Source: Lepidodermella squamata
Lineage: Eukaryota; Animalia; Gastrotricha
Length of the DNA: 64,000 bases
NCBI GenBank assembly: GCA_047495785.1
Contig: JBLDXI010000042.1
Location: forward strand, 4,526,001 to 4,590,000
Direction: 5' to 3'
Below the pieces are notes generated by a model, which saw only the letters and a list, made by a program, of their open reading frames with translations, did no database searches and was not told where the DNA came from. Position numbers and translations under genes: made by a program. Below are positions 6,629 through 52,247 of the stretch, one piece after another. Positions within the stretch are counted from its first letter, which is position 1. Every line of letters starts with the position of its first letter.

Positions 6629-7008
6629 CCCTTAGCCGCCGGCGCAATGACGTGTTAACTCGAGCACCTTTCAGAAAATCCCAGAAAATCAAGAAGAGGC
6701 TAAATTCAAATTCTGAGTCGGCAGAAAGTCTTACATTTAGCCTTAGATTGAAAGCCGAACCTCTTTTTCAGAATAAATTTACCTGGGTTGCCGTTGCTAT
6801 GACGTGTTAACAAGTCATTTAACATTTTTCTCACTATTTTCGACCTGGTCAGAATGGCTTTGAAAATTTGGATTTTCGGGGAGTGCTTGTTTCTTGCTAT
6901 GATTTATCATAATTTATGACGCAACAATGGGTTTGATAGCCCAAATCCTCCAACCACGGTGAATTTTCTCCGGAATTAACGCGTGTACACGTCTTCGGCG
7001 GCTAAGGG
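6629..7008. mobile_element. Non-autonomous piggyBac-like element (380 bp)
   Basis: 13-bp terminal inverted repeats (TIRs) CCCTTAGCCGCCG, flanked on both sides by TTAA. Confidence 0.85.
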
Positions 7009-7127
7009 TTAAGCTATTCCGAAAGGAGCACCCTCATGCTCTGTGTTAGGGCCGTGCTTATTTTAAAGTAACATTATCCATTTATCAAACGAATCTTGTA
7101 CTCGAGAGCCCACATTTTACCAAAACA

Positions 7128-9362
7128 ATGCTTCTGAATCAAACGACCTTTCTCTGCTCTGTGTTCATTCTGCTAAGAATTTCCAACTCAGAGAAGTCTA
7201 CGAAGTTGAAGGTTTTGGTCATTTCACCCATAGCCAGAAACGATCCGAAGCTGGCGGCTGCCTGGGTTGCGACATGTCAGTATGTAGTGGATAAAGTGAA
7301 TCGGCAAAGCGGTTTCTTGCGCGATTATTATATCGAGTTCGATGTACGGGATGAACTCCTTGGAATGCAGGCCGTTCAACGCCTGATCGATTTCCGCAGA
7401 GAGAACTCGAGCTTACAGTCGCCTATAATAGCGGGCCCAACCTATTCAGTAGGATGCCAAGCTGCAGGCCCCATTTTACATCGCTACGACACAGTTTCGA
7501 TCTCGCCGCTCTGCGCAGGTCCGAATCTTTACGGAAACCCTATGTTCCCGAATTTGTTTCTTAGTCTAACAAGTGCCATTCCAACTATTATGTCAATGCT
7601 AGCCTTCGTGAAAAAGGTCGGAAGGTGGGAGAACATTGGCATAGCCGGCACAGCAGGTCCGGAATATGCACTATCCCAATATCTGCACGATCGATCTATC
7701 GAATTTGGGATCAACGTCCTTTTCTTCGATGTTGCAAACGACATAAAACCAGAGTTTGTAACGAATCTGAAGCTAGCGGGAGTTCGCATCATTCTATTTG
7801 GAACGTCCAATCCACTCATTTTCACGCAGTTTCTTTGCGAGGCGCATAGAGCAGGATTGGTTGGACCTCGCTACGTTTTCTTGACCTTCTCCTTTTCTTT
7901 CTCCCTAGAACCACCTAGCGGTTGTACTGCTGCAATATTGATTTTGCAAGCAAGGCAGACGTTTTATTTCGGCAATTCAGCTTCACCTCGGTATTACGGC
8001 GCGATTAGCGATCTTGGCGATACTGCTGAGCAGTTTGAATACTTTTTGTCCGTGTCAAACTCTCTTAAACCTGGTGAGTACTCGAGGCTCTATCTGCTTC
8101 GTGACACGCTGTCCAGCATCGTCTTAGCCCTTGAGGAAACAGACCAGCGTTTGAGAACCGGTTTCAACATGACCCTGAGGAACTATTCTGATAGGCCAGA
8201 AATCGTCGCCAAAGTCGCGAGAGAAGCAGTTTTGGCCAAAGAGTATTTTGGACTTCGAGTTGGGCGAACCCGTTATACCGAAACCGGGGGAATTTCGGGC
8301 GATTTCCGTGTGGCGACACAATGGACGCAGCGCAACGGGACCCAAGTGGTTAACTTCATACAACTTGGACTAAATTACAGTTCTGAGAAGAATGTGTATG
8401 ATTACATCGTCGAGCCGGGAGCTAAAATAGAATGGACAGTTGGTCTGCCACCTCAAGATCGGCCGCAGATTCTAACGCAACTACTGACGGTTCCTATTTC
8501 GATTTCGATAACTGTATGGATTTTAGCCTCTGCGTTATCATTCATTGTTCTTTGTTGCTTTGTGCGCCTCCTCTCCAAAGAACCTCATAAACTGAAGCTT
8601 AATTCAAAAATCCTAGGACTGTCCGGGTCTCTCTTGCTAAATCTCACGGCGATTTTCTTTGCCCTCGACGCGACCCACTCTGTAGTGATTATTAGATTTT
8701 TCACCTTGGGAATAGCCATATCAATCATATGTGGCTACATAACAGCGCACTTCATCATTTGGAACTCTGTACTTACAAGAAGACTGAGAAGGTTATCTCG
8801 CAAATCGGTCATCTCTGTGTTAGGCGGTGCCAACATAGCTAGATCATCTAACATTCGAGTATCGTCTAATATTAAAATTGAAATTCCCCGAAAGGTTCTT
8901 GCTACGAATATCGGAGTGGCTATTCCTTCAATTCTTTTAATGATATCATGGACAATGACATCTAAGCCGAAATGCAATATAGTGTTGGCGTCACAACCAA
9001 CTTACAACGATATATCCGATATCGTCGAAGAGAGTTGGGTCGTGAATTGCTCCACGACTTCCACTTCACTTGCGTTGTTGGGAGCCTTTGGCGCGTTCCA
9101 AATAATTCTTCTTCTATTAAGTATTTTCCTTGCCTACAGTTTAAAGCAGCTGCGAATTGTTACTGGCATTCGTGACGAATATCTGGCACTCAGTGCTTCT
9201 GCGGTCATCACTGCGACTCTGCTTCCAGCTGGGATTTTAATAACAATACTGCTGGGCAGCGATCCAATCAAACTGCAGTCTGCAGTAGGATTCCTCGCGG
9301 TTATATTATCGACTTCGTTTTCAGTCGCCTGGCTCTATCCTAGTAGGAATCGGCTGGCTTAG
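7128..9362 (+). CDS. Intronless class C (GABA-B-like) GPCR copy B, intact, 744 aa
   Basis: Signal peptide. Venus-flytrap motifs include IIAGPTYSVGC, VRIILF, FLCEAHRAGLVGPRYVF and PPQD before TM1. No cysteine-rich domain. Seven TM segments ending WLYP. Confidence 0.88.
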   Translation: MLLNQTTFLCSVFILLRISNSEKSTKLKVLVISPIARNDPKLAAAWVATCQYVVDKVNRQSGFLRDYYIEFDVRDELLGMQAVQRLIDFRRENSSLQSPIIAGPTYSVGCQAAGPILHRYDTVSISPLCAGPNLYGNPMFPNLFLSLTSAIPTIMSMLAFVKKVGRWENIGIAGTAGPEYALSQYLHDRSIEFGINVLFFDVANDIKPEFVTNLKLAGVRIILFGTSNPLIFTQFLCEAHRAGLVGPRYVFLTFSFSFSLEPPSGCTAAILILQARQTFYFGNSASPRYYGAISDLGDTAEQFEYFLSVSNSLKPGEYSRLYLLRDTLSSIVLALEETDQRLRTGFNMTLRNYSDRPEIVAKVAREAVLAKEYFGLRVGRTRYTETGGISGDFRVATQWTQRNGTQVVNFIQLGLNYSSEKNVYDYIVEPGAKIEWTVGLPPQDRPQILTQLLTVPISISITVWILASALSFIVLCCFVRLLSKEPHKLKLNSKILGLSGSLLLNLTAIFFALDATHSVVIIRFFTLGIAISIICGYITAHFIIWNSVLTRRLRRLSRKSVISVLGGANIARSSNIRVSSNIKIEIPRKVLATNIGVAIPSILLMISWTMTSKPKCNIVLASQPTYNDISDIVEESWVVNCSTTSTSLALLGAFGAFQIILLLLSIFLAYSLKQLRIVTGIRDEYLALSASAVITATLLPAGILITILLGSDPIKLQSAVGFLAVILSTSFSVAWLYPSRNRLA

Positions 9363-9810
9363 TTCGGTAAAATATTTCTAATTAATTTCATCGTTTACAC
9401 AATGAGGGATCTGTGTATTCCTGTATTTATGTCATTTTATAGCGAATAAAAGCCAATAACCTTCAAGCACAAGAAAATCTAGTATACCGGTGTAGGTTAG
9501 GAATCTCGCACTCGACAATAAATATCGAGTAGTTAATCGATGGTGATGTTTTTTCAGATGTTTTTTAAGATTCCAACGAATTCCATTTTCCCTCTAACAA
9601 CGTCGATGCGGCTCTTTTTTGATATGGCTACTTCCTAACGATATCTAAGAGCACTTCTTGAGTCATGCACGCGTCGTTAGATTTCAGAAAGCTTGAATAC
9701 AACCGCTCGTGCTGTATTATTCTCCCTAAATTAGCTACATTGGCAGAAAATCACGGAGTGTAATAGGTAGGAGCGCTCTCACGTGTTGTCCAAAGCTCAT
9801 TCCTACGAAG

Positions 9811-12048
9811 ATGTTATTGAATCACCTTGCTTTTCTCTTCTCATTGTTATTCGTTCTGTCCATCAGCTTAGACAATCCCATCAAGCTTAATGTCCTGGTG
9901 ACTGCGCCAATCAGCAAGAATGACCCGAGGCTGGTGGCCGCATGGACGGCAACATGCCAGTATGTAGCCCAGAAACTTAACAGCAGGAGTGATATACTAC
10001 GCGATTATGCAATTGAATTCGACTTGCGTGACGAAGTCGTTGGTGGCGCGTAAGCCGCTCAACGCGTGATCGAATTCCGAAGGGATAACTTAAGCTTACA
10101 GGCGCCTATAATAGGAGGCCCAGCCACTTCCCTCGGGTGCCAGGCTGTGGGCCCTGTTTTACATAAAATTAACACGGTCTCTATCGCCACACTTTGCGCC
10201 GCTGATAATCTTTACGACAACCCTTTGTATCCAAACTTGTTCCTAAGTCTCACCAGTGCGAAGCTTTCGGCTATGGCAATGCTAACTTTCGTTAAAAAAA
10301 TTGGCCAATGGAGAAAAATTGGAATTGTCGCAGTAGCTACAGGCCTTGAGTTTTTATTATCTTTATATTTGCATGACCGAGCGATTTCATCCGGCATGAA
10401 CGTCCTTTTCTATGACGTTTTAAGTGATGTCACGCCAGAGTTTTTGACTAATCTGAAGCTGACGGGAGTTCGTATAATTCTTATACCAACGACTCTCAAA
10501 ATATTTGTTACGCAATTTCTCTGCGAGGCATACAGAGCGGGAATTTTTGGGCCACGCTATGTATTCTTGGCATTCTCACTTTCATTTTCGCTCGAGCCGC
10601 CTCAAGGTTGTTCGGAAGCAGTCTTAATGCAACAAGTGAGACAGACATTTTATTGCGGAAATTCAGCTATGCCGCGAGCTTACGGCGTGGTTAGTGATCT
10701 CGGAGATACTGCCGAGGAATTTGAGTATTTTCTGTCCAACTCAACCTCTCTGAGGCCTATGGAATACTTGACGTTTCACGTGGTTCGTGATGCGTTGTCA
10801 AGCATCGCAATTGCCTTGAATGAAACGGACCAACGTCTTAAGGCTGAACTTAATATGTCTCTGAAAGAATATGCTAATAAGCCTGAAGTTGTGGCGCGTT
10901 ACGCGAGAGAAGCAGTTTTAGGTAAGGAATTCTTGGGACTGAGGCTTGGCCGCCGATCGCGTTACACAAAGAACGGCGGAATGTCGGGCGACTTTCGGGT
11001 TGCAACGCAATTGTCCCAGGTGGTCAACTTCATTCAGCTGAGGCAAAATTCCAGTTCTTATGGGGATACAATGGAATACGAAATTCAGCAAGGTGCAAAG
11101 ATAGAGTGGCTTTTGGGGTCACCACCTCGTGATCAGCCGCGAACTCAGATGAACCTTTTAACGGTTCCAGTGTCAACCTCTGTGCCAGTATTGGTTTTAT
11201 CCTCCACGTTGATATTTGGGCTACTTTTCTGCGTTGTGAGAATTATTTCAAAAATCTATCCCAATCTCCAAATCAAATCGAAAGTTGTTGGTTTGGCAGG
11301 TTGTCTGCTGCAAAACGTTTCTGCTATTATTTTTGTTCTAGGCGTTACGCGTGCTACTTTAATTTCTAGCTTATTCATGCTTGGAATATCCATCTCCATA
11401 GCTTGCGGCTACATTGCGGCTCATTTCTTAATGTGGAACTACGGCTATAAGAAAAGACTGAGAAAGTTACATCACAAGCCGGGTGCGGCTGGAATCTTTG
11501 ACACTAATAGTAAAAAGGGCCTGAACAATTCGGATGTGACCGAATCTCAACCTCACCCGAATTTTAACCGAAAGGTTTTTGCAATGAATTGCGGAATCTC
11601 TATTCCCTCGTTTTTCTTGATGATAGCTTGGGCTGTTACATCAGAGCCTGATTGCCGGAAAGTTCTTGCATTCCCGCCAATATACGACGAAATCGCCGAT
11701 ATTGTCGATGAGAGCTGGGTAGTGAAGTGCTCACTCAGCTCCACTTCGTTAGCTGTGCTAGGTGCATTTGGCGCCGTTCAAATGACACTGCTAATGATAA
11801 GTCTATTCCTAGCCTATAGTTTAAAGCAACTACGCAACATATCAGGGTTTCGAGACGAATATCTGGCTGTCAGTATTTCCGCGATTATTACTGCCTCGCT
11901 TCTGCCTACTGGGGTTCTGATAATATTGCTTTTAGGCGATCCGATTAAGCAGCAGTCTGCAATAGGTTTCATTGCTATCATACTGTCTTTTGGTGTTTCG
12001 GCATCCTGGCTGTATCCCAATAGGAATCAGCTGATACGAATTGCTTGA
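9811..12048 (+). pseudogene. Class C (GABA-B-like) GPCR copy C with a single in-frame TAA at 10051-10053
   Basis: ORFs 9811-10053 and 10066-12048 are in the same frame. The TAA aligns to a Gln codon (CAG) in copies A and B. Confidence 0.8.
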
Positions 12049-17731: not shown

Positions 17732-18372
17732 ATGGCCTTGGTAAGTAATTTTACCCTGGTTTTTTTCAAGATTTTTTCAAATATTAGCTATTATTAGGGT
17801 GGAAAAGATGCTAAGCTTTTTATCAGCTATTCTTGGGCCTGTGGCAAGGAAGAAGTCGAAGGCCTAGCTGATTTCCTAATCGCAAAAAAGCATTTCGGCA
17901 ATGTTTGGATCGATCGCAATGAAATGTACGGCAATACTGATGATCGAATGATTGAGGTATACGGCAAAACAACCCCTCAATTCGATATATTTTCAAGTTT
18001 TCTGTCATTTCAGGGCATCAACGACGCTGATTTGGTCGTCATTTGCTTCAGCGATGCTTACGTTAATAGCGAAAACTGCATGAAAGAACTCAGTTTCGCG
18101 GCTAATAAGAAGAAGCCCATGTTCCCGATCAATGTTGAGAGTGACGAATTTGAAACGCCGGATAAAATTTTGTTCCACATCAAAACCGCGCTGTGGCACA
18201 AGTATTTCGGCGAGGAGGAGCAGAAGGAGCCGATTTTTCAACACATTTGCAAGGTTTTGGCCGAAATCGAGGCAAAAGCTGCCGAGGAAGAGTAAATATT
18301 TACTAAAAATTTCAGAAATTGATGTCTACCGATTTTCTTAACTTTTTATTCAGAGGTGAAGAGGACGCCTGA
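17732..18372 (+). CDS. TIR-only protein (exons 17732-17740, 17798-17956, 18014-18291, probable 18354-18372)
   Basis: The spliced product contains LFISYSW, VWID..EM, GINDADLVVICFSDAY and SENCMKEL (catalytic-Glu position), followed by KKKPMFPI. Confidence 0.85.
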
Positions 18373-23123: not shown

Positions 23124-25681
23124 ACTATACCCTCCTTCAGGGTGAACGTCGCTTTGAAAACGTGCGACATGGGCCCGGCTTCCTGGGATATTCCGCGTGA
23201 AACTTTGCAACTAGCTCCGAGGAATTTTGAACATTTGAAGCAGGTTCCCAAGTCCGTTCCTCCGGGCCGTAGCCACGCCACTCAACCAAATACTTCAATT
23301 TTCCACGCTCGAACTTGGAGTCAACGATAGATTCGACTTCGAACTCTTCCTCGCCATCAACTTCAACAGGCGGTGGCGGAGGCTGGGTTCGATTTTCGAT
23401 GACATTAGCGATGAAAGGTTCCAACAAAGAAACATGTACAACCGGATGAATTTTTATCGAAGCAGGGAGTTGAAGCTTGACCGCACGATTTCCGACCAAT
23501 CCTTCGATGAGAAATGGGCCCAACGGGGCCCAATGGGTAATCCAACTTCTTTGAAGGTCGATTCGTAGTCAAATTCGAAGCATTCAACCAGACCTTTCAC
23601 CCGGCTTAAAATCTGGTGCTTCTTGACGATGACGATCGGCAAATTTCTTGTAGTTTTGCTTAGCAGTTTCAAGATGGTTGGTCAAAACTTCAGACAAATC
23701 GCTTAGCTGCTTTGCTCGAAATTCGGCTCGAGGTACTTGAGTAGTGGACGGTGTCGTAAAATCGAAGCGAGGATGAAATCCGTAATTTGCGAAAAATGGC
23801 GAGGCTTTGATTGAGTCATGAATGGAATTGTTGTAGCAGAATTCGGCAAAAGGGAGTAGTTCGAACCAGTTATCTTGTTGATAGGAACAATAGTAGCGTA
23901 GATATTGTTCAAGGCAAGAATTGACACGTTCTGTTTGCCCGTCAGTTTCCGGGTGAAACGCCGTCGACATTTTGACTTGACAATTGAGTAATTCGAGGAA
24001 TCTTCTCCAGAAATGCGACGAAAATTGTGTTTCGCGATCACTGATGGTATCCTCCGGCAGGCCATGGAGCCGAAAAACTCGATCCAAAACAGCTTGCGCC
24101 GTTTGCTCAGCAGTCGGTAGCCCCGGAAATGCAATAAAATGAACCATTTTAGTTAAACGATCCACAATCCACAACATTTAAAATACAGGTCATACCGTTA
24201 GATGGCGGAAGTTCAACAACAAAATCCATCGAAATCGAAGCCCAAGGTCGGGTCGGCGTCGGTAACGCCTGGAGGAGACCGTAGGGTTTGTGACGTTGAT
24301 TCTTGACTCTGGCGCAAGTTTCGCACGAGCGAACGAAGGTCCGTACGAAGTCGCGTTGTCGCGGCCACCAGTAATCTCTTGAGACCAACTCGAGCGTTTT
24401 CGCAATTCCAGGGTGCCCAGCGATCTTTTCGTCGTGTCGCGACTTGACGACTTCGAGACGCATGGATTCTGGCACGTAGATTAGATTCTCGTACATCAGG
24501 ATCTCATTTGATAAGCTCAATCGAGTCACGTCGAGATTGATCGAGGCACGTTTTCCGGCGAGCAAATTGCGAGCAGCAATGACAAACTCGTCCTTCTCCT
24601 GGGCATTGCGAATGCGGCCATGCCACGGGTTTTCCGAGTAAACAAACGAGCGAAGAGCCATGATTTTCAAATTTTTTGAATGTAAAACAAATTCAGGTTC
24701 GGTTACAGCGACGGAGGACCGATCTTCCGATTTCCTTGAGAGCGCGTCAGCCTTACCGCCTTGTGACCCAGGCCGAAACTTGATGACGAAGTCGAACCTT
24801 GCAAAGAGCATCGCCCATCTTGCTTGGCGTTGGTTCAAAACCTTCAACTTCGATTCGAAGAACTCCAAGTTCCGATGATCAGTGTAAACTGTTATTTGAT
24901 GGCGAGCGCCTTCAAGGTAGTGACGCCACTGTTCAAACGCGACCTTGATTGCCAGCAGCTCCTTGTCATGTACGCCGTACCGTTGTTCAGCCGCTGTGAG
25001 GCTTCGAGAGTAGAACGCACAAGGATGAAGATGACCATCTGCCGCCACTTGAGAGAGAATGCAGCCAACTGCGTAATTGGACGCATCGGTTTCAACAGTG
25101 AATGGCTTCCTTGGATCAGGGTGAATCAATACGGGCGCTTGCGTGAATCGCTTCTTCAACTCCATGAAGGGTTCTTCAGCTTGACGGCTCCAGACAAAGA
25201 CCGAATTTTTGCGCATCAATCGAGTCAGCGGTTTCGTTATCGAGGCAAAATCTCTAATAAACCGACGATAAAAATTAGCAAAACCTAAAAAAGTTTGAAC
25301 TTCCCTGAGGTTGGTCGGGCTTTTCCAGCTTCGAACGGCTTCGACCTTCGCTAGCGACATGGTGATCCCATCCGTGCCGACAAAAAATCCAAGAAACTCC
25401 ACTTTCTCAACTTCGAACTCACATTTCGTGAGCTTAGCGAACAACTTGTTTTCTCGAAGCCGTTGTAGCACCATTTTGACGAGAATTTCATGCTCGGCCA
25501 GCGAATTTGAGAAGATCAAAATGTCATCTAAATAGACGATAACAAAAATGTCGATCATATCCCGAAATATGTCGTTCATAAAATGTTGAAATGCCGCCGG
25601 GGCCCCGGACAATCCGAAGGGCATAACCAAATATTCGAACAGGCCGTAGCACGAACGAAAGGCTGTCTTCCATTCATCCAT
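23124..25681 (-). mobile_element. Ty3/Gypsy chromovirus-type pol remnant (RT-RNaseH-integrase-chromodomain), frameshifted and 5'-truncated
   Basis: YLDD, TDAS, the HHCC zinc finger, ISMDF, PETDGQTER, a GPF motif and the chromodomain EFEVESIVD..YLVEWRGY..TWEP are all present. A polypurine tract is followed by TGTAAC (LTR start) at 23124. A possible LTR end lies at about 22419. Confidence 0.93.
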
Positions 25682-27400: not shown

Positions 27401-27769
27401 GGGTTTTTCATCATGCTCGAACTTCGATTGTCCTCGACTGTGATCAAGTCAACAAAATAATAACAATACTCTAATTTTCCGGTTCAAGCCCGAGGTCGAG
27501 TGGGTTGCAGCAAAGAAAAATCACCCTCCAATTCGACAAGATATAAGCTTCTACAAAACGTGACATGATTGTAATTTAAGACTGCGCCGTGTGACCCTCG
27601 ATAATTTCTGACTGCGTGTCCATTTTTAACAAACAGCACCTAAATGCTTGTTTTATTTTCTTCGCTCCCATTAGTGATGAATCGACGCGTCAATCGAAAT
27701 TAAGTAACCGATGAAATGATATGAATAAATTTAGAGATTGGTCAAAGAACATTTTGAATTGAGTAATGA

Positions 27770-27815
27770 AAACCGCAGAATTCGTGCATTAGCCAATGCA
27801 CGAATTCTGCGGTTT
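27770..27815. repeat. Perfect 21-bp inverted repeat with a 4-nt loop
   Basis: AAACCGCAGAATTCGTGCATT-AGCC-AATGCACGAATTCTGCGGTTT. Confidence 0.9.
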
Positions 27816-27884
27816 CCATAGAGAAGACTTAATCTTCATAAGAATCTTAAAACCGGCTAAAAACAGGTAGAATTCCGACCGAAC

Positions 27885-30800
27885 TCATTCGTTCTGACCC
27901 GCAGAAACCGTATCAGGTGCTTTCTCCGCTAGAAACTGAACAACTTCAAGGTGGCCATTTTGAGCGGCAATCAACAGCGGCGTTGAGCCTGTGTTGTCAG
28001 CAGTGGAAACCGTATCAGGGGCTTTCTCCGCTAGAAACTGAACAACTTCCAGGTGGCCATTTCCAGCGGCAACCCATAGCGGCGTTGAGCCTGTGTTCTC
28101 AGCAGTGATAACCGTATCAGGGGCTTTCTCTGCCAGAAACTGAACAACTTCCAGGTGGCCATTTTGAGCGGCAATCAATAGCGGCGTTGCGCCTTCGTTC
28201 TGAGCAGTGGAAACCGTACCAGGGGCTTTCTCTGCCTGAAACTGAACAACTTTAAGGTGACCATTTTGAGCGGCAATCCACAGCGGCGTTACGCCTGCGT
28301 TCTGAGCAGTGGAAACCGTATCAGGGGCTTTCTCTGCCAGAAACTGAACAACTTCAAGGTGACCATTTTGAGCGGCAATCCACAGCGGCGTTGCGCCTTC
28401 GTTCTGAACAGTGGAAACCGTATCAGGTGCTTTCTCTGCTAGAAACTGAACAACTTCCAGGTGGCCATTTCCAGCGGCAATCCATAGGGGCGTCGAGCCT
28501 GTGTTCTCAGCAGTGGAAACCGTATCAGGGGCTTTCTCTGCTAGAAACTGAACAACTTCCAGGTGGCCATTTTTAGCAGCAATCCATAGCGGCGTTGTGC
28601 CTGTGTTGTCAGCAGTAGTAACCGTATCAGGTGCTTTCTCTGCTAGAAACTGAACAACTTCCAGGTGGCCATTTCCAGCGGCAATCCATAGGGGCGTCGA
28701 GCCTGTGTTCTCAGCAGTGGAAACCGTATCAGGGGCTTTCTCTGCTAGAAACTGAACAACTTCAAGGTGACCATTTTGAGCGGCAATCCAATGCGGCGTT
28801 GCGCCTTTGTTGTCAGAAGTGGTTACCGAGTCAGGTGCTTTCTCTGCTAGAAAGTGAACAACTTCCAGGTAGCCATTTCCAGCGGCAAACCATAGCGCCG
28901 TAACGCCGTTGTTATCCGCTTCAAATACAGTTGCGGGTGATGTTTCAAATATCAGAGCAACTGCTGCTAAATCACCGTTAATCGATGCTATTTTCATAGC
29001 CTCCTCTGCTTCGGTTATGTTGAAAAAACACTTCGAAGCTGTTACGTCTCGCTTTAAAACTGCTTCCAGGAAATCGGAAGCTTCGTTCCTGCTTATCAGC
29101 GTGTGTAACATCGTTCTTGCCGCATATCTCCAGAGAAACCCCGTAAGAAATTTCGTTATTTCGTTTCTCTCATATTTCAGCGTCTCAGTCTCGTTGTCGC
29201 TCCAGACTTGCATCAGAAAAGCTAAGTTGCCGTGCTCTGCTATGCATTTGATGTATTCTTGATTTCGATGCAGCTTTCGCAAAATCCATGCTATCATTCG
29301 ATAGGACTGATGCGTGCCATACTGCTTGTAATCATCGTTCTCTCGTCGGCGAAAATTGTCTTCCCACTCTAAGCCATACAGAAAATGGATGAAAGACTTG
29401 CCCTCGCTTTCGCTCATCGATGTACAAACTTCCAGCAATGCTTCGTTACCCAAACACTCCAGAATATCACGTAGCAGTTTTCGATGAACTGCTTTATGCT
29501 TTTGACCAGCTCTGCCCTTGAAAAATTCAAAAAGCATCATCTCGACTTTCGAAGAGTTCCCTGTTTGCAGCAAGAATACTCGAACTTTGTCATACAAATC
29601 CGCGGCATTTGAGGCTGCTATGTTGAAATCTTTCGCTGCTCGCCGAAAACCAGCCTCCCAAAGCAACTGATGCGTGAAAGAGAGTTCTAGCCCTAGCCCA
29701 GCCGTCCTGATAAGTCCTTGCTGGTCAAAGGCATTAAGGACCTCTTTGACTTTCAGGTTAGGTGCCAGTTGGTGCCACAACATTTTTAGATATTCGACGG
29801 AAATCGGAAAGTTTGGCTGGAATAGCAAGAAGGCGTAGAAACATTGCCTATAGCCCTCCCCTAGTCGTTCGAGGGAAAACTGCAACAGACTATCAACGGT
29901 TTGTTCTTTGAAACGGGGATCGCCGCCGTTAATAGACATATCAAAGTCTATAGACTTTTGCGCAACGAACTCTTCATACTCCTCGTCCCAATCGTAATTT
30001 CCGAAGCGGAAGCGGTTGGCAATAAGAGACATGATCAGAGGCAAACCACAGCACATTTTCGCAAGGTCAGCTATCTTTTTCTCGGCGTTTGATTTAAATT
30101 TCTTTTTCAGTTCGCACACATTTCCAAGATACTCTGCAATAACATTAAACTCGAGGCTATCAATCTTCTCTAATTTGTGGATGAGCTGCCGCTGTCGTAC
30201 CAAAATCGGATATGGGTCTCGTGTTATGACGCAGCAGGACATTTCCGACTGCTCTTGCACGAAGTAGCGAAGTAATTCAATGTTGAACATATCATCGAGG
30301 ACGACTAAGACGCGACGGCGATATTTCTCTCGGAAATACTCGCTGATGTGAGGTAGTTCCGATCCAGTGAACTCAGCAGAGGTTTTTTTAGCGAGGGAAA
30401 TAAGACTCTCCCGGAAATCTTTTTGGTCCGAGTCGTCGAATGTTGTACCTTGCCACTTGAAACACCGAAGCCACAGAACAACCGTTGGAGATTGCAACCC
30501 CGTCGGTACATCAATTCTACCGAGCAAATTTGCCAGCAACGCAGATTTTCCAACGCCTCCCTCGCCAGAAACGAGCAGTATACTAGTATTTCCTAAGAAC
30601 CCATTTCCGATTTTTTATGTATAATTTCGTAGAAGAAACAGCCTACCTTCCGTTCGATTATTGCATATTTCGATTAGATGTTTCATCATAGTATTTTCAA
30701 GATCATTCCGCTTTAAATAGTTTGGAATGTTGATAGGTAAGCTTGAAGCGTAGAATCGATTCCAGACAACGGTTTTTCGAGCGGGAATTCCAAGATTTAG

Positions 30801-31357
30801 GCGGATTTGGCGGCAAATTTCACTCGCGTCGTCCTCAAAATGCATGGCTTCGGTGCGTAAGTTTACATAGAGTAAATCTTTCAGTTCAGGCTTGTCATCC
30901 AAATTGCATTTCTTGTCCAAATGAACGAGGAGTAGTTTCTTTTTTAAATCGCAAGCATAATTGAATTCGAAAGCGGAATTAGAGCCTTCACGACGGTATT
31001 CTTCACTTAGGAAGCAAACAACGATATCAGCCGAGTCGATTCCCTGTTAATGTAAGACATAAAACAAGGGAAACTCAAAAGAAACTGAAAACTTGCTGCC
31101 TTCATCCTATCCGTAAGACTACCGTACATGTCATTTTTATCGAAGAATACGTCAAAGTCGGGCTGCTGGCAGAGATAGTCGTTAGCGACTTTCCAGACGT
31201 CCTCTTTCCGAGATCTCCACGAATAGCTGACAAATACACGAGGTTTTTTGATACTAGTAACTAAATCTGACGCTTTCGTTGTTACTTCATCTCCGGGAGT
31301 GGCCTGAAATTGAATAGACACACTCGATTCAGCTAACATTAAGATGAAACGTACCAT
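27885..31357 (-). CDS. TIR - NB-ARC (STAND) - ankyrin repeat protein, NLR-like (coding exons 31357-31355, 31303-31097, 31043-30647, 30592-27885)
   Basis: TIR: VFVSYSW, FFDKNDM, GIDSADIVVCFLS, NSAFE. P-loop: GEGGVGKS. Walker B: VLVVLDD. Also VITRD, CGLPL and an MHD-position THQ. Ten 34-aa ankyrin repeats follow. The 51-54-nt introns restore one frame; intron 2 needs a GC donor. Confidence 0.88.
27894..28913 (-). repeat. Ten tandem 102-bp coding repeats (ankyrin)
   Basis: Consensus NxGxTPLWIAAxNGHLEVVQFLAEKAPDTVSTAx, near-identical at the DNA level. Confidence 0.95.
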
Positions 31358-34300
31358 AGTTCCAATCTACGATTTGAATGCTAAAATCACTGAAATTTCT
31401 AAAAATCGAAACAATATTTTATGGAAGATGCGGAAGACATGCAATCAAAGTTGTCTAATTCGAAAAAATCGTGCCACAAAAATTAGTCCGGATTAGGCCC
31501 AGTCGGAAAAATTTGTCACTGGACGAGAACATGACATTATTAATGAAATTTAGTTTCGTGAAACTGAGGAACGATAAGCCAAAATATAAACGCTAATAGT
31601 TTAATTTCGGTTTAAAAAGCCGTGGTAACAATGCGCAGATAAAAAAGACTAAAGACAGCTAAGCACCCACTATCCAGCGGAAATGTTACCTATCAAGCGG
31701 CCCCCGGACCATAAAAATGCAAAAAAGTGTTGCGCCAATTTAATCCAAATCAAACAGCGCTCTGCTTATCAGTTTGTTATTTCATGTCATGTCGTAGTCT
31801 TTGAGGCAGCTCTTTATAGAAACTATTCAGCATTTTAGCTCTGTCTCTCTCTTTCTCTCCTTCTCTTCTCGCCTCAATCTGCGCCTGCCGGCGTTCGTTA
31901 TCTCGTTTTGAAACTGGTCAAACAATGCAGCTTGTTTGGCCAGTTTCAAAACGAGATAACGAGTAATGAAGGATAATAATAATAATAATTGGAGTAATGA
32001 AGGAGCCGCAACTGTGTGTGGCCGACAAAGGCGTATCAGATCGAAAGGCGGGCGCGCGCGCGCAGTACTTGAGCCCTTATTATACGTATTATGCGCGGTC
32101 ACGTGATCGCGAGAATCAATGCAAACCTTCCGGGACTTTTCAATCAAAAACCATAGATGATACTTGGATGCGACAAAAAGCAGTAAAAGCAGTAAAATGT
32201 GAGGACGATTGGGATAGTTTTTATTGCTGTAGCATTTATGGTTGTTGAGATATAACAAATTATCGCAAATTCAGCCCTTTTGTTCCGGGACTTTTCGTAT
32301 CAACACCGTTAATCGCATATTTTTAATGTTTATACCATTGGGAGAGTTTTCTTTTAACAATAGCACTTACGGCTGTGATGCAATGATGCGCCAAACATGA
32401 CTATGTTGCGCGCCCCTCGCTCGCTATTTCTCGCGCATTCGCGCGCGCACACACGCCAATTCCTCATCGTTCAAGAGCACTTGAGACGAACGTAACTACA
32501 AGATGGTGTCAAGAAAATGAAGAAATGAAGAAATGCAGTGATGCTTCGCTCTTCATCGTCGAATACCTGCTACCTGTTAATACTGTAAAATTCCTGGGAT
32601 GAGCCTGTCGGACCAGCGTTACTTACGATTCAAGCGAAAAGCAGATGAGGAAAGCCCTGATGGCACTGCTTTTGTGAACAGACTGAGAGCTATGAGGCCC
32701 TATACGCACGGCGTCAGGCGTTTTCAACGAGGCGTGGGATCCCTTAAACTTTAGTGCCCTGACATCTGCTCAGAGGAAGGTACGCGATGGAGTCCGCGCT
32801 CTAGGTGAGCCTCCGGTCCTGAGGGCAGGACCCAATAAGCAGGCAATGCCCGCTTGGCTGGTATCAGCCGCCAGGTACGCATCCTGGCTTCAACTTTCAC
32901 TTGGGCTAATGCCCTATGTTAGAGCGTGGCGGTGTGCGCCAATTGCGAGCACTGCACGTGCGTGCCAACCCGTTGGTACGCCATATCCGTACGGCTTTTC
33001 TTGGCTGCATTAAGTTTGCAGTTGGTTTGTGGGTTTGATTGGACTTGTGAGCTAATGGCTCACTTGAGGGTACTTGTGGCCCGTTCCGCAGACCCAGTGT
33101 CCTTAACAAAAAAAAACGGACCTTTGCACTGGAACCTTGACGTGGTGGTACCGCTTGACCAGCTAATGATCCAAGGCCTCACTGTCAGGGAAATCCTGAA
33201 TGTGCTATATCTTGTTGGTTGCCTAATGCCAGTGCCGTCGTCAGGCTGCCTTCAGTGTAGCCGCGACAATAAGGACATTCAAACACTCTCTGCCGACAAC
33301 TGCTATTATTGTTATTTCCTGCCCAAGTGGCTGTCGGCCATGTCTTGGCCATACACATGGATGAGATCTTAGCAGTAAGCAATGCGAACTGTTCCACAGC
33401 TTGGCGGCAACCCGCTGGGATGTGTGCCTCTGAAGACCCGACCCGGCTTAGATCCGACTCGGGGACAACCCCGAGGCCGCGTATTCAGGCCTCGTTTTCG
33501 TTCGTTTCGTTCTAATAGGTCTAGTATGGGTCTAGTGGGAGTTTGGTCAAAGTGAAGCCGACCTAGCTGGGCCTAGGTATCCAGGCCTGAAAACCAGGCC
33601 CGAAATAGGCCCGTTATTTTATGAGGCATTGTTCAGTTTCTTCCATTAGGCCGATCAGTGGTCTAGGTAACCATGCCCGGAAAATTCCAGAGCATATAAT
33701 GTAACCAGAATCTAGCAACAGTTTTAAATGAATAGATTTCTCGACAACCTGCGTACTTAAAATAAGTTTCTAAGGATAAACTTAGAAATTAGATTTCCGG
33801 TATTGATCCGTTAAGACTTAAGACATAACAGGTTGCAAAAATCTTGACGTTTCAGGCTATACCTAATCTGGCTATAGCGTACTAATGACTATGTGTGTGC
33901 TACGTGGATACCGATTTCCCCATTAGATTCCCCAGGCTACGTTGGAAACATTTAAACATTTAACAACATAAAAATCATGGACTCCCTCCAATTGCTCTAT
34001 GCTCCAACTGCTCCAACCTTACTTGCCTTCACACGTGCGTCAGAAAATTGAAGAAACCGATTTGAAACTTAGGGTAAGGTTACCTAAATGTGCATAAAAT
34101 ATTTCGACTTTTTTCAAACACTTGTCATTCCATAACCATGGGGTTCTTCGGGCTCATATTTTGACCATCGACAGTCAGAACCCATTTCAGTCAGCTCACA
34201 AAATCTCATGAGCTACGTCCTCATCGTTAGCGAGCCACCGCTGCTCAGAGTCAGCAAAAAACGCTCGAGGGTGCCCTAAATTTGCATAAAAGCCAAAAAG

Positions 34301-48562: not shown

Positions 48563-49957
48563 TTATGTCGTCATTTTCACAATGTAATAGCTGTCGACGA
48601 TTATCGCAATCAAAATAACAGCTCCTACCATGATGCAATCCAAAAACCGGCCAGTCCTTACAAAAGATTTGAATCGAACTTCTTTCGATGCATCATTTTG
48701 GGCATCTGTGTTGCGATCCACATCAGCGTAGATGAGAGACGTTAAAATCTGGTAGAAGGTTAGCACCAGAGATATTATGAATTTTTCTGAAACAAGGTTA
48801 ACGAGGTAAACCGTCTCCGAAGTCTGGGGAATACGATCGAAAACCGAGGCCATGACTACGGCGTAAGCCAGTACGATAGTAACACTGAAGCTTACGCGAT
48901 CCATTCCACTAGGAGGCATCAGCATACTAGCCAACTGCATTACGTACAATGCGTATACCGGCAGAAAAATGCTCATGTAGTAGTAGTGGGGTCTCCGAAC
49001 AAATTTGATGTTGAATTTGATGCGCTGTAATGTAACATCGTCAGTTCCTGATAGATTTAAAACTTCTGCTGGCATTAGGCGATCCAGTGCCCATATGTCT
49101 GTATCACCAATGAAGCTGTCTTTTGCTGGAATGTCTATTTCAAAATTCCAGACTTCCGAAATCAATGCTGTGTTGTCATAGTAACTATCCAAAATGATTC
49201 CGCACACCAATGTGTCGAACGGAAATTTCTGGAAGGAGAAATCTCCACATGTATTGTCGTACCTTCCCGTAGCCAAGTACATGGCTAATTTGTAGGAAAA
49301 AGGATAAATCCATACGTAACGATCAGATTGCCTGGTGGTTAAACAAAAAATATAATGCATAAGAGTTCAACTGTTGTGCTTACGTTTCGATTGATCTGGG
49401 CAGGATGAAAGCGTTTTGGTGGACATAACTTGGATACCTAAATATATGCAGTATATAGCTACAAAATTAATAATGATTTCACTACTGCAATACCATGTTT
49501 CCTCGAACGGAATCGGAAAAGATAGCGTGAATGATTTTGTATTATTTCTAGTGCAATAGTCCGAGTCTTCTCCTAGCAGACGGGTGCAGTTTAGTTTTGG
49601 GCACGGATAATCCCAGTGAAACCTGAAAGCAGCCCAAAGCGACAATCTGTCTTCCAATTATCAACAAGTTATCATCAACTGTTTATGGCTTTGCTATTAC
49701 CTCTGGTCTTTGTCGTTAATTTCTATCATTCGAACCAGTTGCAAAGAAACTGAGACTGTGATGGGTCCGCCTCCGTTTCTAAGTAACCAATCAGCATGTA
49801 ACGTTCGCGTCGTGACTTCTGGACACGAGTTGATAACATTTCTCTTTAAGATCTCCGACTGAAGAGAGCTTATCGGCGTAATGATCGGTAACGTTGTCGC
49901 AACTGCTTGGCTTGCAAGCCAAGTGCTCATCAAAATTTCAGCTAAAAAGAAAAACAT
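48563..49957 (-). CDS. Divergent Cys-loop ligand-gated channel, copy 4
   Basis: Four-exon paralog with intact splice sites. Confidence 0.88.
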
Positions 49958-50846
49958 TTCTTCACTCTTGACTTACTCTTGACAGCAAAATTGCTCGACT
50001 ATTGTAGCTTTAGCATTAACCGCAGCTGAAATAACGCGAAAATTTAGCCAAATACATTCCTGTAGGTCATGTAGATGATAAGAATGATAGGTAGCTTTTA
50101 ATGACGTAAGCCAGTGTTTGCTTGATCAACGCACTTTTTCGATCACAACTCGCGTTAGCAGCTGTTTACTTTGAAAAGAAGAAAGAATAATCTTGACGCA
50201 TTCTTTAGCAAACTGAATGATTTTCAAAAAAATATTATTAACTTTGTGTTGGATGAGAATTATGCCTATAATTTACAACTTCCAGCGTGAAGCGTGAATT
50301 TAGGCCATCAAAGTCGTGGGATTTCAAGCCCCCAAACCCCAAATGAGAGTTTAATTATTTTTCCCCCGAATTCATGTCGCGTGCCGGAATTCGGAGGATA
50401 GCAGACCTAAATACCATTTTTAATTTCGCATTTGGTTATATCGTTGTAAACAGGTGAACAAGCTCAATCCTACATTCGAAATACATATTTCTTCGGCTTC
50501 AAATCGCTATCGACTCGGCTTTAATTGACTACTTGAATAACGGTCGTTCATCCGGGCTTCACCCACAACCCCCGGTTTATGCCTTTGTAGCGAATCGCTC
50601 GTGTCAGTATTGATGTTTTGTACAGGTTAATAGAGACATTGCTCCAACAGAAACGTATCGACGGAAATTTTTATTGCAAATTATTAATTTTAAAGACACA
50701 CTAATCTAAGGATTTCTGTGTCAAATCATAAGAAAGGAAGCGAGCAACTACAACGGAGATTATCAAAAGAAAGCATACAACAAGCAAGAATCACACAGGT
50801 ATCATTTGAATGGGTATAATGTGCAAATTCCTCAGTTATTCAGGTT

Positions 50847-52247
50847 TTATGTCGTCATTTTGACAATGTAATAGCTGTCGACGATTATCACAATCAAAAT
50901 AACAGCTCCCGCCATGATGCAATCCAAAAACCGACCCGTCCTCGCGAAAGATTTGAATCGAACTTCATTAGATGCATCATTTTGGGCATCGGTGTTGCGA
51001 TCCACATCAGCGTAGATGAGAGACGTTAAAATCTGGTAGAAGGTTAGCACCAGAGATATTATGAATTTTTCTGAAACAAGGTTAACGAGGTAAACCGTCT
51101 CCGAAGTTTGAGGAATGCGATCGAAAACCGAGGCCATGACTACAGCGTAAGCCAGGACGATGGTAACACTGAAGCTGACTCGTTCCATTCCACTAGGAGG
51201 CATCAGCATACTAGCCAACTGCATTACGTACAATGCGTATACCGGCAGAAAAATGCTCATGTAGAAGTAGTAGGGCTTCCGAACAAATTTGATGTTGAAT
51301 TTGATGCGCTGCATGGTAAAATTGTCTGCTCCTGTTAAATTTAGAACTTCAGCTGGCATCAGGCGATCCAGCGCCCATATGTCTGTATCTCCAATGAAGC
51401 TGTCGCGAGCTGGAATATCTATTTCAAAAGCTGAGACATCCGATATCAGTACTGTGGTGTCCACGTAACAATCTAAGACGATCCCGCACACCAATGTGTC
51501 GAAAGGAAATTTCTGGAAAGAGAAATCATCACATGAATTGTCGTATCTTCCTACTGCCAAATAGTTTGCCACTGGATCTCCAAGTGGGGTTATCCCTACG
51601 TAACCTTCAGATTGCCTGGTTTAGAACAAAACTCATACAGTCAAAAGAACAAAATGCATGAGTATATGCTTACGTTTCAATTGCCTTGGGCAGGATGAAA
51701 GCGTTTTGATGGACATAACGTGGATGCCTATACAATTATACACGAGCTATAGCTAAAAAATTCATGACTTAAGTAATTTAATACCATGTTTCCCCGAACG
51801 GAATGTTAAAATACAGCGTAAATGGTTTGGTGTCATCCCTTGAGCAATAGTTCGAAGCCTCTCCCATCAGCTGAGTGCAGTTAAGTTTAGGGCACGAATA
51901 ATCCCAGGTAAAGCTGAAAGTAGCCCAGAGCGACAATCTGTCTTCCAATTACTAACAAGCTGTCCTCAACTATTTATAGGGTTTAGTCATTACCTCTCGT
52001 CTTTATCGTTGATTTCTATCATCCGAACCAGTTGTAAAGAAGTGTAGACATGTAGTGGTACGCCTCCACTCGTAAGTAACCAATCAGTAGGTAGCGTTAG
52101 CGACGTGACTTCCGGACATGAGTTGATAAAAGTTCGTTTTAGGATCTCTGATTGAAGAGAGCTATTAGGCACAATATTCGGTAACGTTATCGCAACTGAT
52201 TGGCTTGCAAGCCAAGCGCTCAGCAAAATGTTTGCTGAAAAGAACAT
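50847..52247 (-). CDS. Divergent Cys-loop ligand-gated channel, copy 5
   Basis: Four-exon paralog; M2 is MERVSFSVTIVLAY. Confidence 0.88.

What the first reader, a model, noticed from the sequence alone, without database searches (positions are those of the whole stretch)
27885..31357. Animal TIR-NB-ARC-ankyrin NLR-like receptor hidden by tiny introns
Seen: four exons splice into TIR + NB-ARC (GEGGVGKS, LVVLDD, ITRD, GLPL) + ten ankyrin repeats, and the TIR keeps the Glu at the NADase catalytic position (NSAFE). Known: the best-studied animal STAND proteins are NACHT-LRR or CARD-NB-ARC-WD40. TIR-NB-ARC is the plant TNL head, and STAND-ANK is typical of fungal NLRs and some bacteria. Inference: an intracellular immune sensor that oligomerises and cleaves NAD+, with an architecture little described in animals. 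The introns show it is resident in this genome and not a contaminant.
Basis: partly seen in the sequence, partly recalled or inferred. Interest (0 to 1): 0.9.

Follow-up and report, generated by a model that had tools for sequence, protein, structure and literature searches.

The report
Animal TIR–NB-ARC–ankyrin receptor gene
An invertebrate genome carries an apparently intact gene that joins a TIR signalling or enzyme domain, an Apaf-1/plant-type molecular switch and a variable ankyrin array, so it is built like a plant immune receptor, but neither its expression nor its activity has been shown.

Summary
On the minus strand, 31357-27885, four exons separated by introns of 51, 53 and 54 nt encode a 1104-aa protein. 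It has a TIR_2 domain, an NB-ARC domain, a conserved helical linker, and an N-cap plus ten 34-aa ankyrin repeats.

The splicing is supported indirectly. The NB-ARC exon has no in-frame ATG before its P-loop. Relatives carry the same junctions in uninterrupted ORFs. The TIR intron position is shared with a TIR-only paralogue in this window and with a metagenomic relative. One intron is GC-AG.

The NTPase folds like Apaf-1 and plant NRC1. The TIR keeps an invariant Glu that aligns with the catalytic Glu of plant TIRs, and a paralogue model is closest to SARM1.

Relatives are very rare: 18 weak hits among 1.8 billion proteins, the ten nearest looked up all unnamed metagenome proteins; two loci repeat TIR-NB-ARC-ANK.

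Each pairwise domain combination is already published for animals (amphioxus TIR-NB-ARC-WD40, coral STAND-ANK). This is therefore a new variant, not a new kind.

Expression, NADase activity and an immune role remain untested.

The scan's first readers noted the same architecture many times on other DNA of this genome, so this locus is one member of a family.

The parts
31355..31357 (-). Exon 1: start codon only, followed directly by a GTACGT donor
   Evidence: Sequence; model. The TIR-only paralogue has the same layout (MAL | intron).
31304..31354 (-). Intron 1, 51 nt, GT-AG. It is in frame and stop-free, so retention would give the alternative N-terminus MVRFILMLAESSVSIQFQ.
31097..31303 (-). 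Exon 2: N-terminal half of the TIR domain (betaA VFVSYSW, alphaA, betaB, BB-loop/alphaB)
   Evidence: Pfam TIR_2 profile positions 1-44, 14.6 bits. PADLOC bSEFIR E 5.7e-6. 36% identical to the paralogue's first half.
31044..31096 (-). Intron 2, 53 nt, GC-AG (GCAAGT...AACAG), phase 0
   Evidence: Enumeration of all stop-free joins. The same intron position occurs in the TIR-only paralogue and in metagenomic relative L002. P0015 is uninterrupted across this point.
30647..31043 (-). Exon 3: C-terminal half of the TIR (betaC, alphaC with Glu96, betaD, alphaE), a linker, and the N-terminal helix of the NB-ARC
   Evidence: Pfam TIR_2 profile positions 47-118, 28.8 bits. Alignment with P0010, P0012 and P0015.
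30966..30968 (-). Codon of Glu96, the candidate catalytic glutamate of the TIR
   Evidence: Invariant in alignments A2 and A4. It aligns to chain index 81 of the RPS4 and RUN1 TIR structures; MyD88 has Gln at this position. Coordinates.
30593..30646 (-). Intron 3, 54 nt, GT-AG, with an in-frame stop (TAA at 30617-30615)
   Evidence: Relatives P0010, P0012 and P0015 read through this junction in a single ORF.
29640..30592 (-). Exon 4, first part: NB-ARC NTPase (P-loop 30566-30543, Walker B LVVLDD, ITRD, GLPL, winged helix with THQ at the MHD position)
   Evidence: Pfam NB-ARC 29.2 bits. AF2 model at pLDDT 73. Foldseek hits Apaf-1, NRC1, CED-4, RPP1 and Roq1. Atlas NB-ARC clusters at TM 0.56-0.64. 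Profile hits to plant NLRs.
29001..29639 (-). Exon 4, middle: helical linker with the family-specific motifs GKSFIHFLY..W and SYRMIA
   Evidence: Conserved in P0001 and P0003 and in the L002 ORF (GMTFLHFLYSVDW, SYRLVREI). Modelled as helices with low confidence.
27888..29000 (-). Exon 4, last part: ankyrin array, made of an N-cap, ten 34-aa repeats and a 7-aa stub
   Evidence: Pfam Ank_2 252.8 bits. TRF period 102, 9.8 copies. Repeat register. Variation is concentrated at 7 positions.
27885..27887 (-). Stop codon TGA. The array ends abruptly, and the sequence downstream is unrelated to the repeat unit.
27766..27819 (-). Hairpin with 25-nt arms in the presumed 3' UTR, 66-120 nt after the stop codon
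   Evidence: 96% complementary, 4-nt loop. It is unique in the window.

Best explanation
This is an apparently intact, spliced, lineage-specific STAND gene of an invertebrate. It encodes a cytosolic TIR - NB-ARC - helical linker - ankyrin protein and is one member of a multigene family.

Shown here:
- The architecture.
- An intact ATP-switch motif set (Walker A K218, Walker B D302/D303, sensor-like ITRD, GLPL, and His510 at the MHD position).
- An NB-ARC fold.
- An invariant Glu96 at the catalytic position of the TIR.
- An ankyrin array whose differences concentrate at a few positions.

Inferred by analogy with Apaf-1, plant TNLs and SARM1: the ankyrin array holds the switch closed and binds a ligand. 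Ligand binding allows ADP/ATP exchange and oligomerisation of the NB-ARC. Oligomerisation brings the N-terminal TIRs together, and they then signal. The most likely output is NAD+ cleavage (depletion or a nucleotide messenger). The alternative is TIR-TIR recruitment of a partner such as the TIR-only protein encoded 10 kb away. The most likely biological role is innate immune or cell-death sensing.
For: Gene model:
- There is no in-frame ATG between the stop inside intron 3 and the P-loop. The first in-frame ATG is at 30290, after Walker B, so exon 4 cannot encode a working NTPase on its own.
- The introns are 51-54 nt with good splice signals.
- The Pfam TIR_2 profile continues from position 44 to position 47 across intron 2.
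- Relatives P0010, P0012 and P0015 are collinear across the junctions within single ORFs.
- The TIR intron sits at the same position in the TIR-only paralogue and in L002.

NB-ARC:
- Pfam score is above the cut-off, and NACHT is below it.
- Foldseek top hits are Apaf-1 at E 1.2e-10 and the NRC1 NB-ARC at TMt 0.69, followed by CED-4, RPP1 and Roq1.
- The family profile finds plant NLRs at E 1e-11.

TIR:
- Glu96 is one of four invariant residues among sequences that are 19-38% identical.
- It aligns to index 81 of the RPS4 and RUN1 TIR chains.
- The paralogue model's best structural matches are SARM1/TIR-1 and Glu-dependent N-glycosidases.
- Weak Nuc_deoxyrib_tr, YtoQ and bSEFIR hits point the same way.

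Conservation of the architecture: L004 encodes TIR_2 + NB-ARC followed by ankyrin repeats. L002 encodes a TIR (two exons) + NB-ARC + ankyrin repeats.

Ankyrin array: pN is 0.38 against pS 0.23 at 7 variable positions, and pN is 0.04 elsewhere.

Localisation: no transmembrane segment or signal peptide in the spliced form.

Family: read depth rises 2-5 fold over parts of the gene in a DNA run.
Against: - No transcript evidence. The only candidate RNA run gave short contigs with inverted joints and no splice joints, so it looks like amplified DNA.
- The TIR score is borderline (28.8 against 28 for the larger piece).
- The best sequence-level PDB match of the TIR profile is the non-enzymatic MyD88.
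- The Trp usually found four residues before the catalytic Glu in plant and SARM1 TIRs is Asn here (reading of the sequence plus my recollection of those motifs).
- This protein's own TIR could not be folded because it is split by a frame-shifting intron. Only a paralogue that is 29% identical was modelled, at pLDDT 74 and with a retained intron loop.
- The ankyrin array has no C-terminal cap and stops 7 residues into a repeat, so a 3' truncation is possible.
- The variable ankyrin positions were chosen after looking at the data, which inflates pN.
- The immune role rests on analogy only.
Confidence: 0.6

Rival explanations
1. Same protein and same switch, but the TIR is a non-enzymatic scaffold. 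On oligomerisation it nucleates TIR-TIR assemblies with an adaptor, such as the neighbouring TIR-only protein or a MyD88- or SARM1-like protein, as TLR and MyD88 TIRs do.
For: - The best PDB sequence match of the TIR profile is MyD88 (E 0.0045).
- There is no Trp before the Glu.
- A TIR-only paralogue lies 10 kb away, in convergent orientation.
- As I recall, several non-enzymatic TLR TIRs also keep a Glu at this position. This was not tested here.
Against: - The Glu is invariant across very divergent relatives, whereas MyD88 has Gln there.
- The structural neighbours of the paralogue model are led by SARM1/TIR-1 and N-glycosidases, ahead of MyD88.
Confidence: 0.25
2. The locus is a recently disabled or silent family member, a 3'-truncated copy in a fast-turnover gene family, and not a working receptor.
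For: - The array stops 7 residues into a repeat, with no C-cap, and unrelated sequence follows.
- No expression evidence.
- A Gypsy element lies nearby.
- The family has many copies.
Against: - The reading frame is open for 1104 codons across four exons.
- All splice signals and all NTPase motifs are intact.
- The repeat framework shows strong purifying selection (pN 0.04 against pS 0.20).
- Relatives also end right after their ankyrin arrays.
Confidence: 0.1
3. These are two genes: a TIR-only gene (exons 1-3, ending at the stop inside intron 3) and a separate NB-ARC-ankyrin gene.
For: - An unspliced intron 3 would give a TIR-only product of about 213 aa.
- TIR-only genes exist in this genome.
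- Some relatives, such as P0026, show no TIR upstream.
Against: - Exon 4 has no in-frame ATG before the P-loop and Walker B.
- The N-terminal helix of the NB-ARC is encoded at the end of exon 3.
- P0010, P0012 and P0015 carry the TIR half, the linker and the P-loop in one ORF.
Confidence: 0.05

Closest known systems
Amphioxus TIR-[NB-ARC]-WD40 hybrid proteins (Zhang et al. 2008, PMC2575513)
   Same: An animal protein with an N-terminal TIR fused to an NB-ARC switch and a C-terminal repeat sensor. It was predicted from a genome and its function is unknown.
   Different: The sensor there is a set of WD40 propellers (Apaf-1-like); here it is a 34-aa ankyrin array. No sequence relationship closer than the general NB-ARC level was found.
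Plant TNL receptors (RPP1, ROQ1, RPS4, RUN1)
   Same: - The TIR - NB-ARC - repeat order.
- The NB-ARC fold.
- A Glu at the catalytic position of the TIR.
- The expected logic of induced TIR proximity.
   Different: - No LRR and no C-JID; ankyrin repeats instead.
- The TIR is of the broad TIR_2 type and lacks the Trp of the plant SxWCxxEL motif.
- The origin is probably independent.
- The EDS1 pathway is not expected in animals.
Fungal NB-ARC/NACHT-ANK NLR-like proteins (Dyrka et al. 2014, PMC4986451) and the 11 Acropora NACHT/NB-ARC-Ank proteins (PMC7642931, Table 4)
   Same: A STAND NTPase with a C-terminal array of highly similar ankyrin repeats, in families that expand within a lineage.
   Different: The N-terminal effector here is a TIR. 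The organism is an animal with about 50-nt introns. No close sequence relatives were found among them.
SARM1 / C. elegans TIR-1
   Same: Best structural match of the paralogue TIR model. An animal TIR with a catalytic Glu whose NADase activity is switched on by oligomerisation.
   Different: SARM1 is ARM-SAM-TIR with no STAND NTPase. Sequence identity is only about 18%.
TeTIR-NACHT STAND proteins (TEP1, NWD1/2; bioRxiv 10.64898/2026.09.21.753143)
   Same: An animal STAND protein with a TIR-like domain directly upstream of the NTPase. NADase activity that depends on the catalytic Glu has been shown for TEP1.
   Different: Those proteins use NACHT and WD40/TPR, and an extended TIR with an RWG loop. 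Here the parts are NB-ARC, ankyrin repeats and a compact TIR_2-type domain.

Membership tests
TIR domain (Pfam TIR_2, STIR clan) | Profile match at or above the curated cut-off | tested here: met
   The exon 3 piece scores 28.8 bits against a cut-off of 28. The exon 2 piece adds 14.6 bits at the adjoining profile positions (1-44 then 47-118). The spliced whole could not be scored as one sequence.
TIR domain (Pfam TIR_2, STIR clan) | Flavodoxin-like beta-alpha fold of TIR | tested here: inconclusive
   Only the TIR-only paralogue could be modelled (29% identical, pLDDT 74). Its best matches are SARM1, TIR-1, MyD88 and RPS4 TIRs and NDT-like N-glycosidases. This gene's own TIR is split by a frame-shifting intron and was not folded.
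Enzymatic (NADase) TIRs | Glutamate at the catalytic position in alphaC | tested here: met
   Glu96 is invariant in A2 and A4. Profile position 25 maps to chain index 81 of 4c6r_A (RPS4) and 6o0w_A (RUN1). That corresponds to E88 and E100 if the construct numbering is as I recall. The E-values are weak (0.5-1.5).
Enzymatic (NADase) TIRs | NAD+ cleavage activity that depends on that Glu | not testable with these tools
   Needs a biochemical assay.
NB-ARC (AP-ATPase) clade of STAND NTPases | Profile match above the cut-off and preference over NACHT | tested here: met
   NB-ARC 29.2 bits (cut-off 23.5). NACHT 13.4 bits (cut-off 26.7). The family profile hits plant NB-ARC proteins at 1e-11.
NB-ARC (AP-ATPase) clade of STAND NTPases | Walker A, Walker B, RNBS-B/sensor, GLPL, and His of the MHD motif | tested here: met
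   GEGGVGKS, LVVLDD, ITRD, CGLPL, and FTHQLL with its His in the column of the IHD/VHD motifs of Apaf-like hits.
NB-ARC (AP-ATPase) clade of STAND NTPases | NBD-HD1-WHD fold as in Apaf-1, CED-4 and plant NLRs | tested here: met
   Foldseek: 3sfz E 1.2e-10, 8bv0_A TMt 0.69, 1z6t, CED-4, RPP1, Roq1. Atlas NB-ARC clusters at TM 0.56-0.64.
Plant TNL | C-terminal LRR (and C-JID) sensor | tested here: not met
   No LRR family among the Pfam hits. The C-terminus consists of ankyrin repeats.
Canonical animal NLR (NACHT-LRR) | NACHT NTPase and LRR | tested here: not met
   NACHT is below its cut-off and there is no LRR.
Apaf-1 / CED-4 / Dark | N-terminal CARD, WD40 sensor (Apaf-1, Dark), APAF1_C helical domain | tested here: not met
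   None of these families appears in the Pfam results. The N-terminus is a TIR.
Ankyrin repeat proteins | Tandem 33-34-aa Ank repeats | tested here: met
   Ank_2 252.8 bits. Ten 34-aa units plus an N-cap.
Orphan 'WLxCxKW' NB-ARC-ANK clade (metagenomic eukaryote contigs) | Shared motifs after the P-loop (WLxCxxW), LLFxPxxP, GKSFIHxLY, SYRMIA, together with the TIR-NB-ARC-ANK order | tested here: met
   Alignments A1 and A3. Loci L002 and L004 show the same domain order. Identity is only 22-29%.

The most novel reading that the evidence does not exclude
An invertebrate lineage has independently built a plant-TNL-like immune system. Earlier notes suggest the lineage is a rotifer, a group reported to largely lack Toll-like receptors. 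The system would be an expanded family of TIR-NB-ARC receptors whose fast-varying ankyrin arrays bind pathogen molecules directly. Their TIRs, once oligomerised, would act as NADases that deplete NAD+ or make nucleotide messengers, possibly together with TIR-only partners.
Probability: 0.25. Interest if true: 0.8.

Novelty: new variant of a known kind. Interest (0 to 1): 0.55.

Why it matters
**Plant-animal parallel.** Coupling of a TIR effector to an NB-ARC switch is the hallmark of plant TNL immunity. In animals, TIRs are thought of mainly as TLR/IL-1R adaptors, with SARM1 (and, very recently, the TeTIR of TEP1) as the enzymatic exceptions. A family of compact TIR-NB-ARC-ankyrin proteins with a conserved catalytic-position Glu would be a further, independent animal case of a STAND-controlled TIR, with a different NTPase clade and a different sensor.

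**Possible answer to an open question.** If the host is a rotifer or another TLR-poor spiralian, the family is a concrete candidate for the question of how such animals sense infection (raised in PMC8609888).

**A family that standard searches miss.** The gene has almost no detectable relatives in 1.8 billion protein clusters, so homology-based surveys do not find it.

Tried and rejected
- **Word-index homology search** with the NB-ARC region: nothing.
- **phmmer against PDB** with the NB-ARC region, the exon 3 TIR half and the P0015 TIR: nothing significant.
- **RNA evidence.** The 'RNA?' run X1 gave roughly 100-nt contigs with many opposite-strand joints and no skip joints, and I read it as amplified DNA. 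Its zero depth upstream of 31352 is therefore not taken as a transcript boundary.
- **Alternative splice joins for intron 2 with GT donors.** Every one deletes betaC or betaB of the TIR, so they were rejected.
- **Independent NB-ARC-ANK gene.** Rejected because there is no in-frame ATG before the P-loop.
- **Bacterial defence or contaminant origin.**
  - PADLOC and NCBIfam give no STAND match.
  - The introns and the animal gene neighbours argue against contamination.
- **Identifying the phylum.**
  - Rfam and tRNA scans of the window were empty.
  - A search with the 744-aa class C GPCR found nothing.
  - The Atlas look-alikes of a Cys-loop channel indicate only 'animal' (Mollusca, Nematoda, Arthropoda).
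  - Earlier notes disagree (rotifer against nematode) and were not tested.
- **Literature.**
  - 'TIR-NB-ARC' as a term occurs only in plant papers.
  - No paper links rotifers with an NB-ARC family.
  - Urbach & Ausubel 2017 is not held.
- **Not attempted.** Folding or scoring the spliced TIR or the whole protein as one sequence, because it has no reference and would have had to be typed.
Full report
**1. What is there**

The finding lies on the minus strand. A mechanical ORF list shows an 884-codon ORF at 27885-30539, a 101-codon ORF at 30615-30920 and a 116-codon ORF at 31007-31357. Reading the DNA and assembling it in a script gives four exons:

- Exon 1: 31357-31355 (ATG only).
- Exon 2: 31303-31097.
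- Exon 3: 31043-30647.
- Exon 4: 30592-27885.

The introns are 51 nt (GTACGT...TTTCAG), 53 nt (GCAAGT...AACAG) and 54 nt (GTAGGC...TCTTAG). The product has 1104 residues.

I add FTHQLL (His510) at the MHD position. That His falls in the same alignment column as the IHD/VHD motifs of Apaf-like proteins.

**2. Are the domains real?**

Pfam:

- TIR_2 matches exon 2 at profile positions 1-44 (14.6 bits). It matches exon 3 at positions 47-118 (28.8 bits, cut-off 28). The two halves of one domain therefore abut exactly at the proposed splice.
- NB-ARC scores 29.2 bits (cut-off 23.5), whereas NACHT scores only 13.4 (cut-off 26.7).
- Ank_2 scores 252.8 bits.

An AlphaFold2 model of the first 520 residues of exon 4 (mean pLDDT 73) finds Apaf-1 first in the PDB (3sfz, E 1.2e-10). 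The next hits are the tomato NRC1 NB-ARC (TMt 0.69), CED-4, RPP1 and Roq1. In the ESM Atlas it finds NB-ARC clusters of bacteria and plants (TM 0.56-0.64). A profile of the family finds plant NB-ARC resistance proteins at E 1e-11. The refutation criterion 'the NTPase does not match NB-ARC' is therefore not met.

**3. Is the splicing real?**

I could not get transcript evidence. The 'RNA?' run gave short contigs full of opposite-strand joints and no skip joints, which looks like amplified DNA. The case for splicing therefore rests on five indirect points.

(a) Intron 3 contains an in-frame TAA. The frame of exon 4 has no ATG until 30290, which is after the P-loop and Walker B. Exon 4 alone cannot make a working NTPase.

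(b) Metagenomic relatives P0010 and P0012 carry the second TIR half, the linker and the P-loop in one uninterrupted ORF. P0015 carries the whole TIR plus the NB-ARC. The spliced query aligns collinearly across both junctions.

(c) Enumerating every stop-free GT/GC-AG join around intron 2 shows that the only joins keeping betaB and betaC are two GC donors three bases apart, and the paralogue's junction picks GCAAGT, the GC-AG consensus donor; every GT donor deletes one of those strands.

(d) A TIR-only paralogue in the same window (17732-18298, plus strand) has a canonical GT-AG intron at exactly the homologous position: DRMIE|GINDADL against DRMKA|GIDSADI. It also has a tiny first exon.

(e) Relative L002, only about 28% identical, has an intron at the same position...AVRQ|TIKLCDLVIVV.

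A conserved intron position also argues for long residence in eukaryotic genomes.

**4. Where does it sit?**

The window also holds:

- Three class C GPCR ORFs at 3.5-12 kb.
- A Gypsy-type pol at 23.1-25.7 kb.
- A Harbinger transposase with its Myb partner at 53.5-55.7 kb.
- At least four Cys-loop ligand-gated channel ORFs at 42-59 kb. Their Atlas look-alikes are molluscan, nematode and arthropod.

This is an animal genome and the gene is not a contaminant. I could not establish the phylum. Earlier notes of this scan say 'most likely a rotifer' or 'probable nematode', and I did not test either.

**5. Relatives**

An exhaustive phmmer search of 1.84 billion cluster representatives with the NB-ARC region found only 18 proteins at E <= 0.001. 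The best are 29-30% identical. The ten nearest that I looked up are unnamed, nine from ENA metagenome assemblies and one from Logan. They lie on contigs with eukaryotic genes such as 7tm_1, G-alpha, CEP104 and Ddi2.

The nearest group shares specific motifs with the query: WLxCxKW after the P-loop, LLFxPxxP, GKSFIHxLY..W and SYRMIA. It also shares the domain order. L004 encodes TIR_2 + NB-ARC (P0015) followed directly by an ankyrin ORF. L002 encodes a two-exon TIR, the NB-ARC and an ankyrin ORF. The architecture is therefore conserved across organisms, not an accident of this locus.

In a DNA run of the same or a close organism, depth rises 2-5 fold over the ankyrin units and parts of the NB-ARC, and contigs branch off there. 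This fits a multigene family. First readers of this scan listed the same architecture at many other places in this genome.

**6. The TIR glutamate**

In alignments of the betaC-alphaC segment from the query, the TIR-only paralogue and three relatives (19-38% identical), only four residues are invariant. One of them is Glu96.

A profile of this segment matches MyD88 best (E 0.0045), and MyD88 has Gln at that column. The profile also matches RPS4 and RUN1 TIRs, though weakly (E 0.5-1.5), with the Glu at chain index 81 in both. By my recollection of the construct boundaries, these are E88 and E100, the catalytic residues.

The paralogue was the only family TIR in this window that could be folded by reference, because its intron is in frame. 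Its model has pLDDT 74. Human SARM1 and C. elegans TIR-1 are its best structural matches, followed by DNPH1, MilB, BcmB and nucleoside deoxyribosyltransferases, all Glu-dependent N-glycosidases, and then by MyD88 and RPS4. Weak Nuc_deoxyrib_tr, YtoQ and bSEFIR hits point the same way.

Against an enzymatic reading:

- The residue four positions before the Glu is Asn, not the Trp of plant and SARM1 TIRs.
- A Glu at this position is not sufficient for activity.

I rate NADase activity as plausible, not shown (about 0.45).

**7. The ankyrin array**

The array is an N-cap plus ten 34-aa repeats from a 102-nt unit (9.8 copies, 88% matches). Differences between repeats concentrate at seven positions in the turn and first helix. 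There pN is 0.38 against pS 0.23. At the other 27 positions pN is 0.04 against pS 0.20. This fits a binding surface under diversification on a conserved scaffold. Because I picked the positions after seeing the data, it is only suggestive.

The array stops seven residues into a further repeat, with no C-cap, and unrelated sequence follows. A hairpin with 25-nt arms lies 66-120 nt downstream.

**8. Mechanism**

Shown: the parts, their order, intact switch motifs, and no transmembrane segment or signal peptide.

Inferred from Apaf-1, plant resistosomes and SARM1: ligand binding or release at the ankyrin array, nucleotide exchange, NB-ARC oligomerisation, and TIR clustering. The output would then be NAD+ cleavage or, alternatively, TIR-TIR scaffolding.

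**9. Comparison and novelty**

- TIR-[NB-ARC]-WD40 proteins were reported in amphioxus (PMC2575513).
- TIR combined with NACHT/NB-ARC was reported in Hydra viridissima, and 11 NACHT/NB-ARC-Ank proteins in Acropora (PMC7642931).
- Placozoan NB-ARC proteins carry CARD or DD with WD40 or TPR (PMC6321704).
- A 2026 preprint shows NADase-active TIR-like (TeTIR) domains in NACHT-type animal STAND proteins (10.64898/2026.09.21.753143).
- A 2026 TIR atlas notes several uncharacterised animal TIR clades (PMC13142454).

I found no description of TIR-NB-ARC-ankyrin in animals. The gene fails the membership tests for plant TNL (no LRR), animal NLR (no NACHT or LRR) and Apaf-1 (no CARD or WD40). It is a new variant of the known kind 'STAND receptor assembled by domain shuffling'.

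**10. Verdict**

Interest is moderate to good. It would be raised by transcripts and an E96-dependent NADase result. It is limited because the function is untested and comparable domain shuffles are known in other invertebrates.

The Gypsy element was only domain-scanned.

Noticed in passing
window 17732-18298 (+): A TIR-only gene of about 165 aa in three exons: MAL | GGKDAKLFISYSW...DDRMIE | GINDADLVVICFSDAY..NCMKELSFA. It is 29% identical to the TIR of the receptor, keeps the Glu, and has introns at the same positions. It is convergent with the receptor gene, about 9.6 kb away, with a Gypsy element between them.
   Followed up: partly
window 3566-12048 (+): Three tandem long ORFs for class C GPCRs (ANF_receptor + 7tm_3). 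The 744-aa one found no relative at all in the word-index protein search.
   Followed up: partly
window 42063-58728 (-): At least four ORFs with Cys-loop ligand-gated channel domains (Neur_chan_memb/LBD), forming a tandem array. A Harbinger element is inserted among them.
   Followed up: partly
window 23137-25681 (-): Gypsy-type LTR retrotransposon pol (RT, RNase H, integrase) with a chromodomain-like tail. The reading frame is broken into at least three ORFs. It was only domain-scanned.
   Followed up: no
window 53541-55745 (-): Harbinger-type element: a DDE_Tnp_4 transposase (409 aa) next to a Myb/SANT-like protein (293 aa). Both ORFs are intact.
   Followed up: no
window 27766-27819: A near-perfect hairpin with 25-nt arms and a 4-nt loop, just downstream of the receptor's stop codon. 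It is unique in the window and its role is unknown (3' UTR element or remnant of an insertion).
   Followed up: partly
window 31270-31381: DNA run X2 holds two contigs of equal depth that differ at 31300, 31329 and 31351. These look like two alleles at the 5' end of the gene; two of the three differences lie in intron 1.
   Followed up: no
window 27600-31351 (run X1): Run X1, labelled as possibly RNA, gives roughly 100-nt contigs with many opposite-strand joints. That pattern is typical of whole-genome-amplified DNA, so the run should not be used as expression evidence.
   Followed up: no
L002 4420-7713; L004 4796-8109: Two metagenomic eukaryote contigs from different ENA samples encode the same TIR - NB-ARC - ankyrin order. 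L002 shares the TIR intron position with the window's gene.
   Followed up: partly
window 31097-31303 (-): The first TIR half matches the PADLOC model of bSEFIR (E 5.7e-6), a bacterial anti-phage protein of the SEFIR/TIR clan.
   Followed up: no
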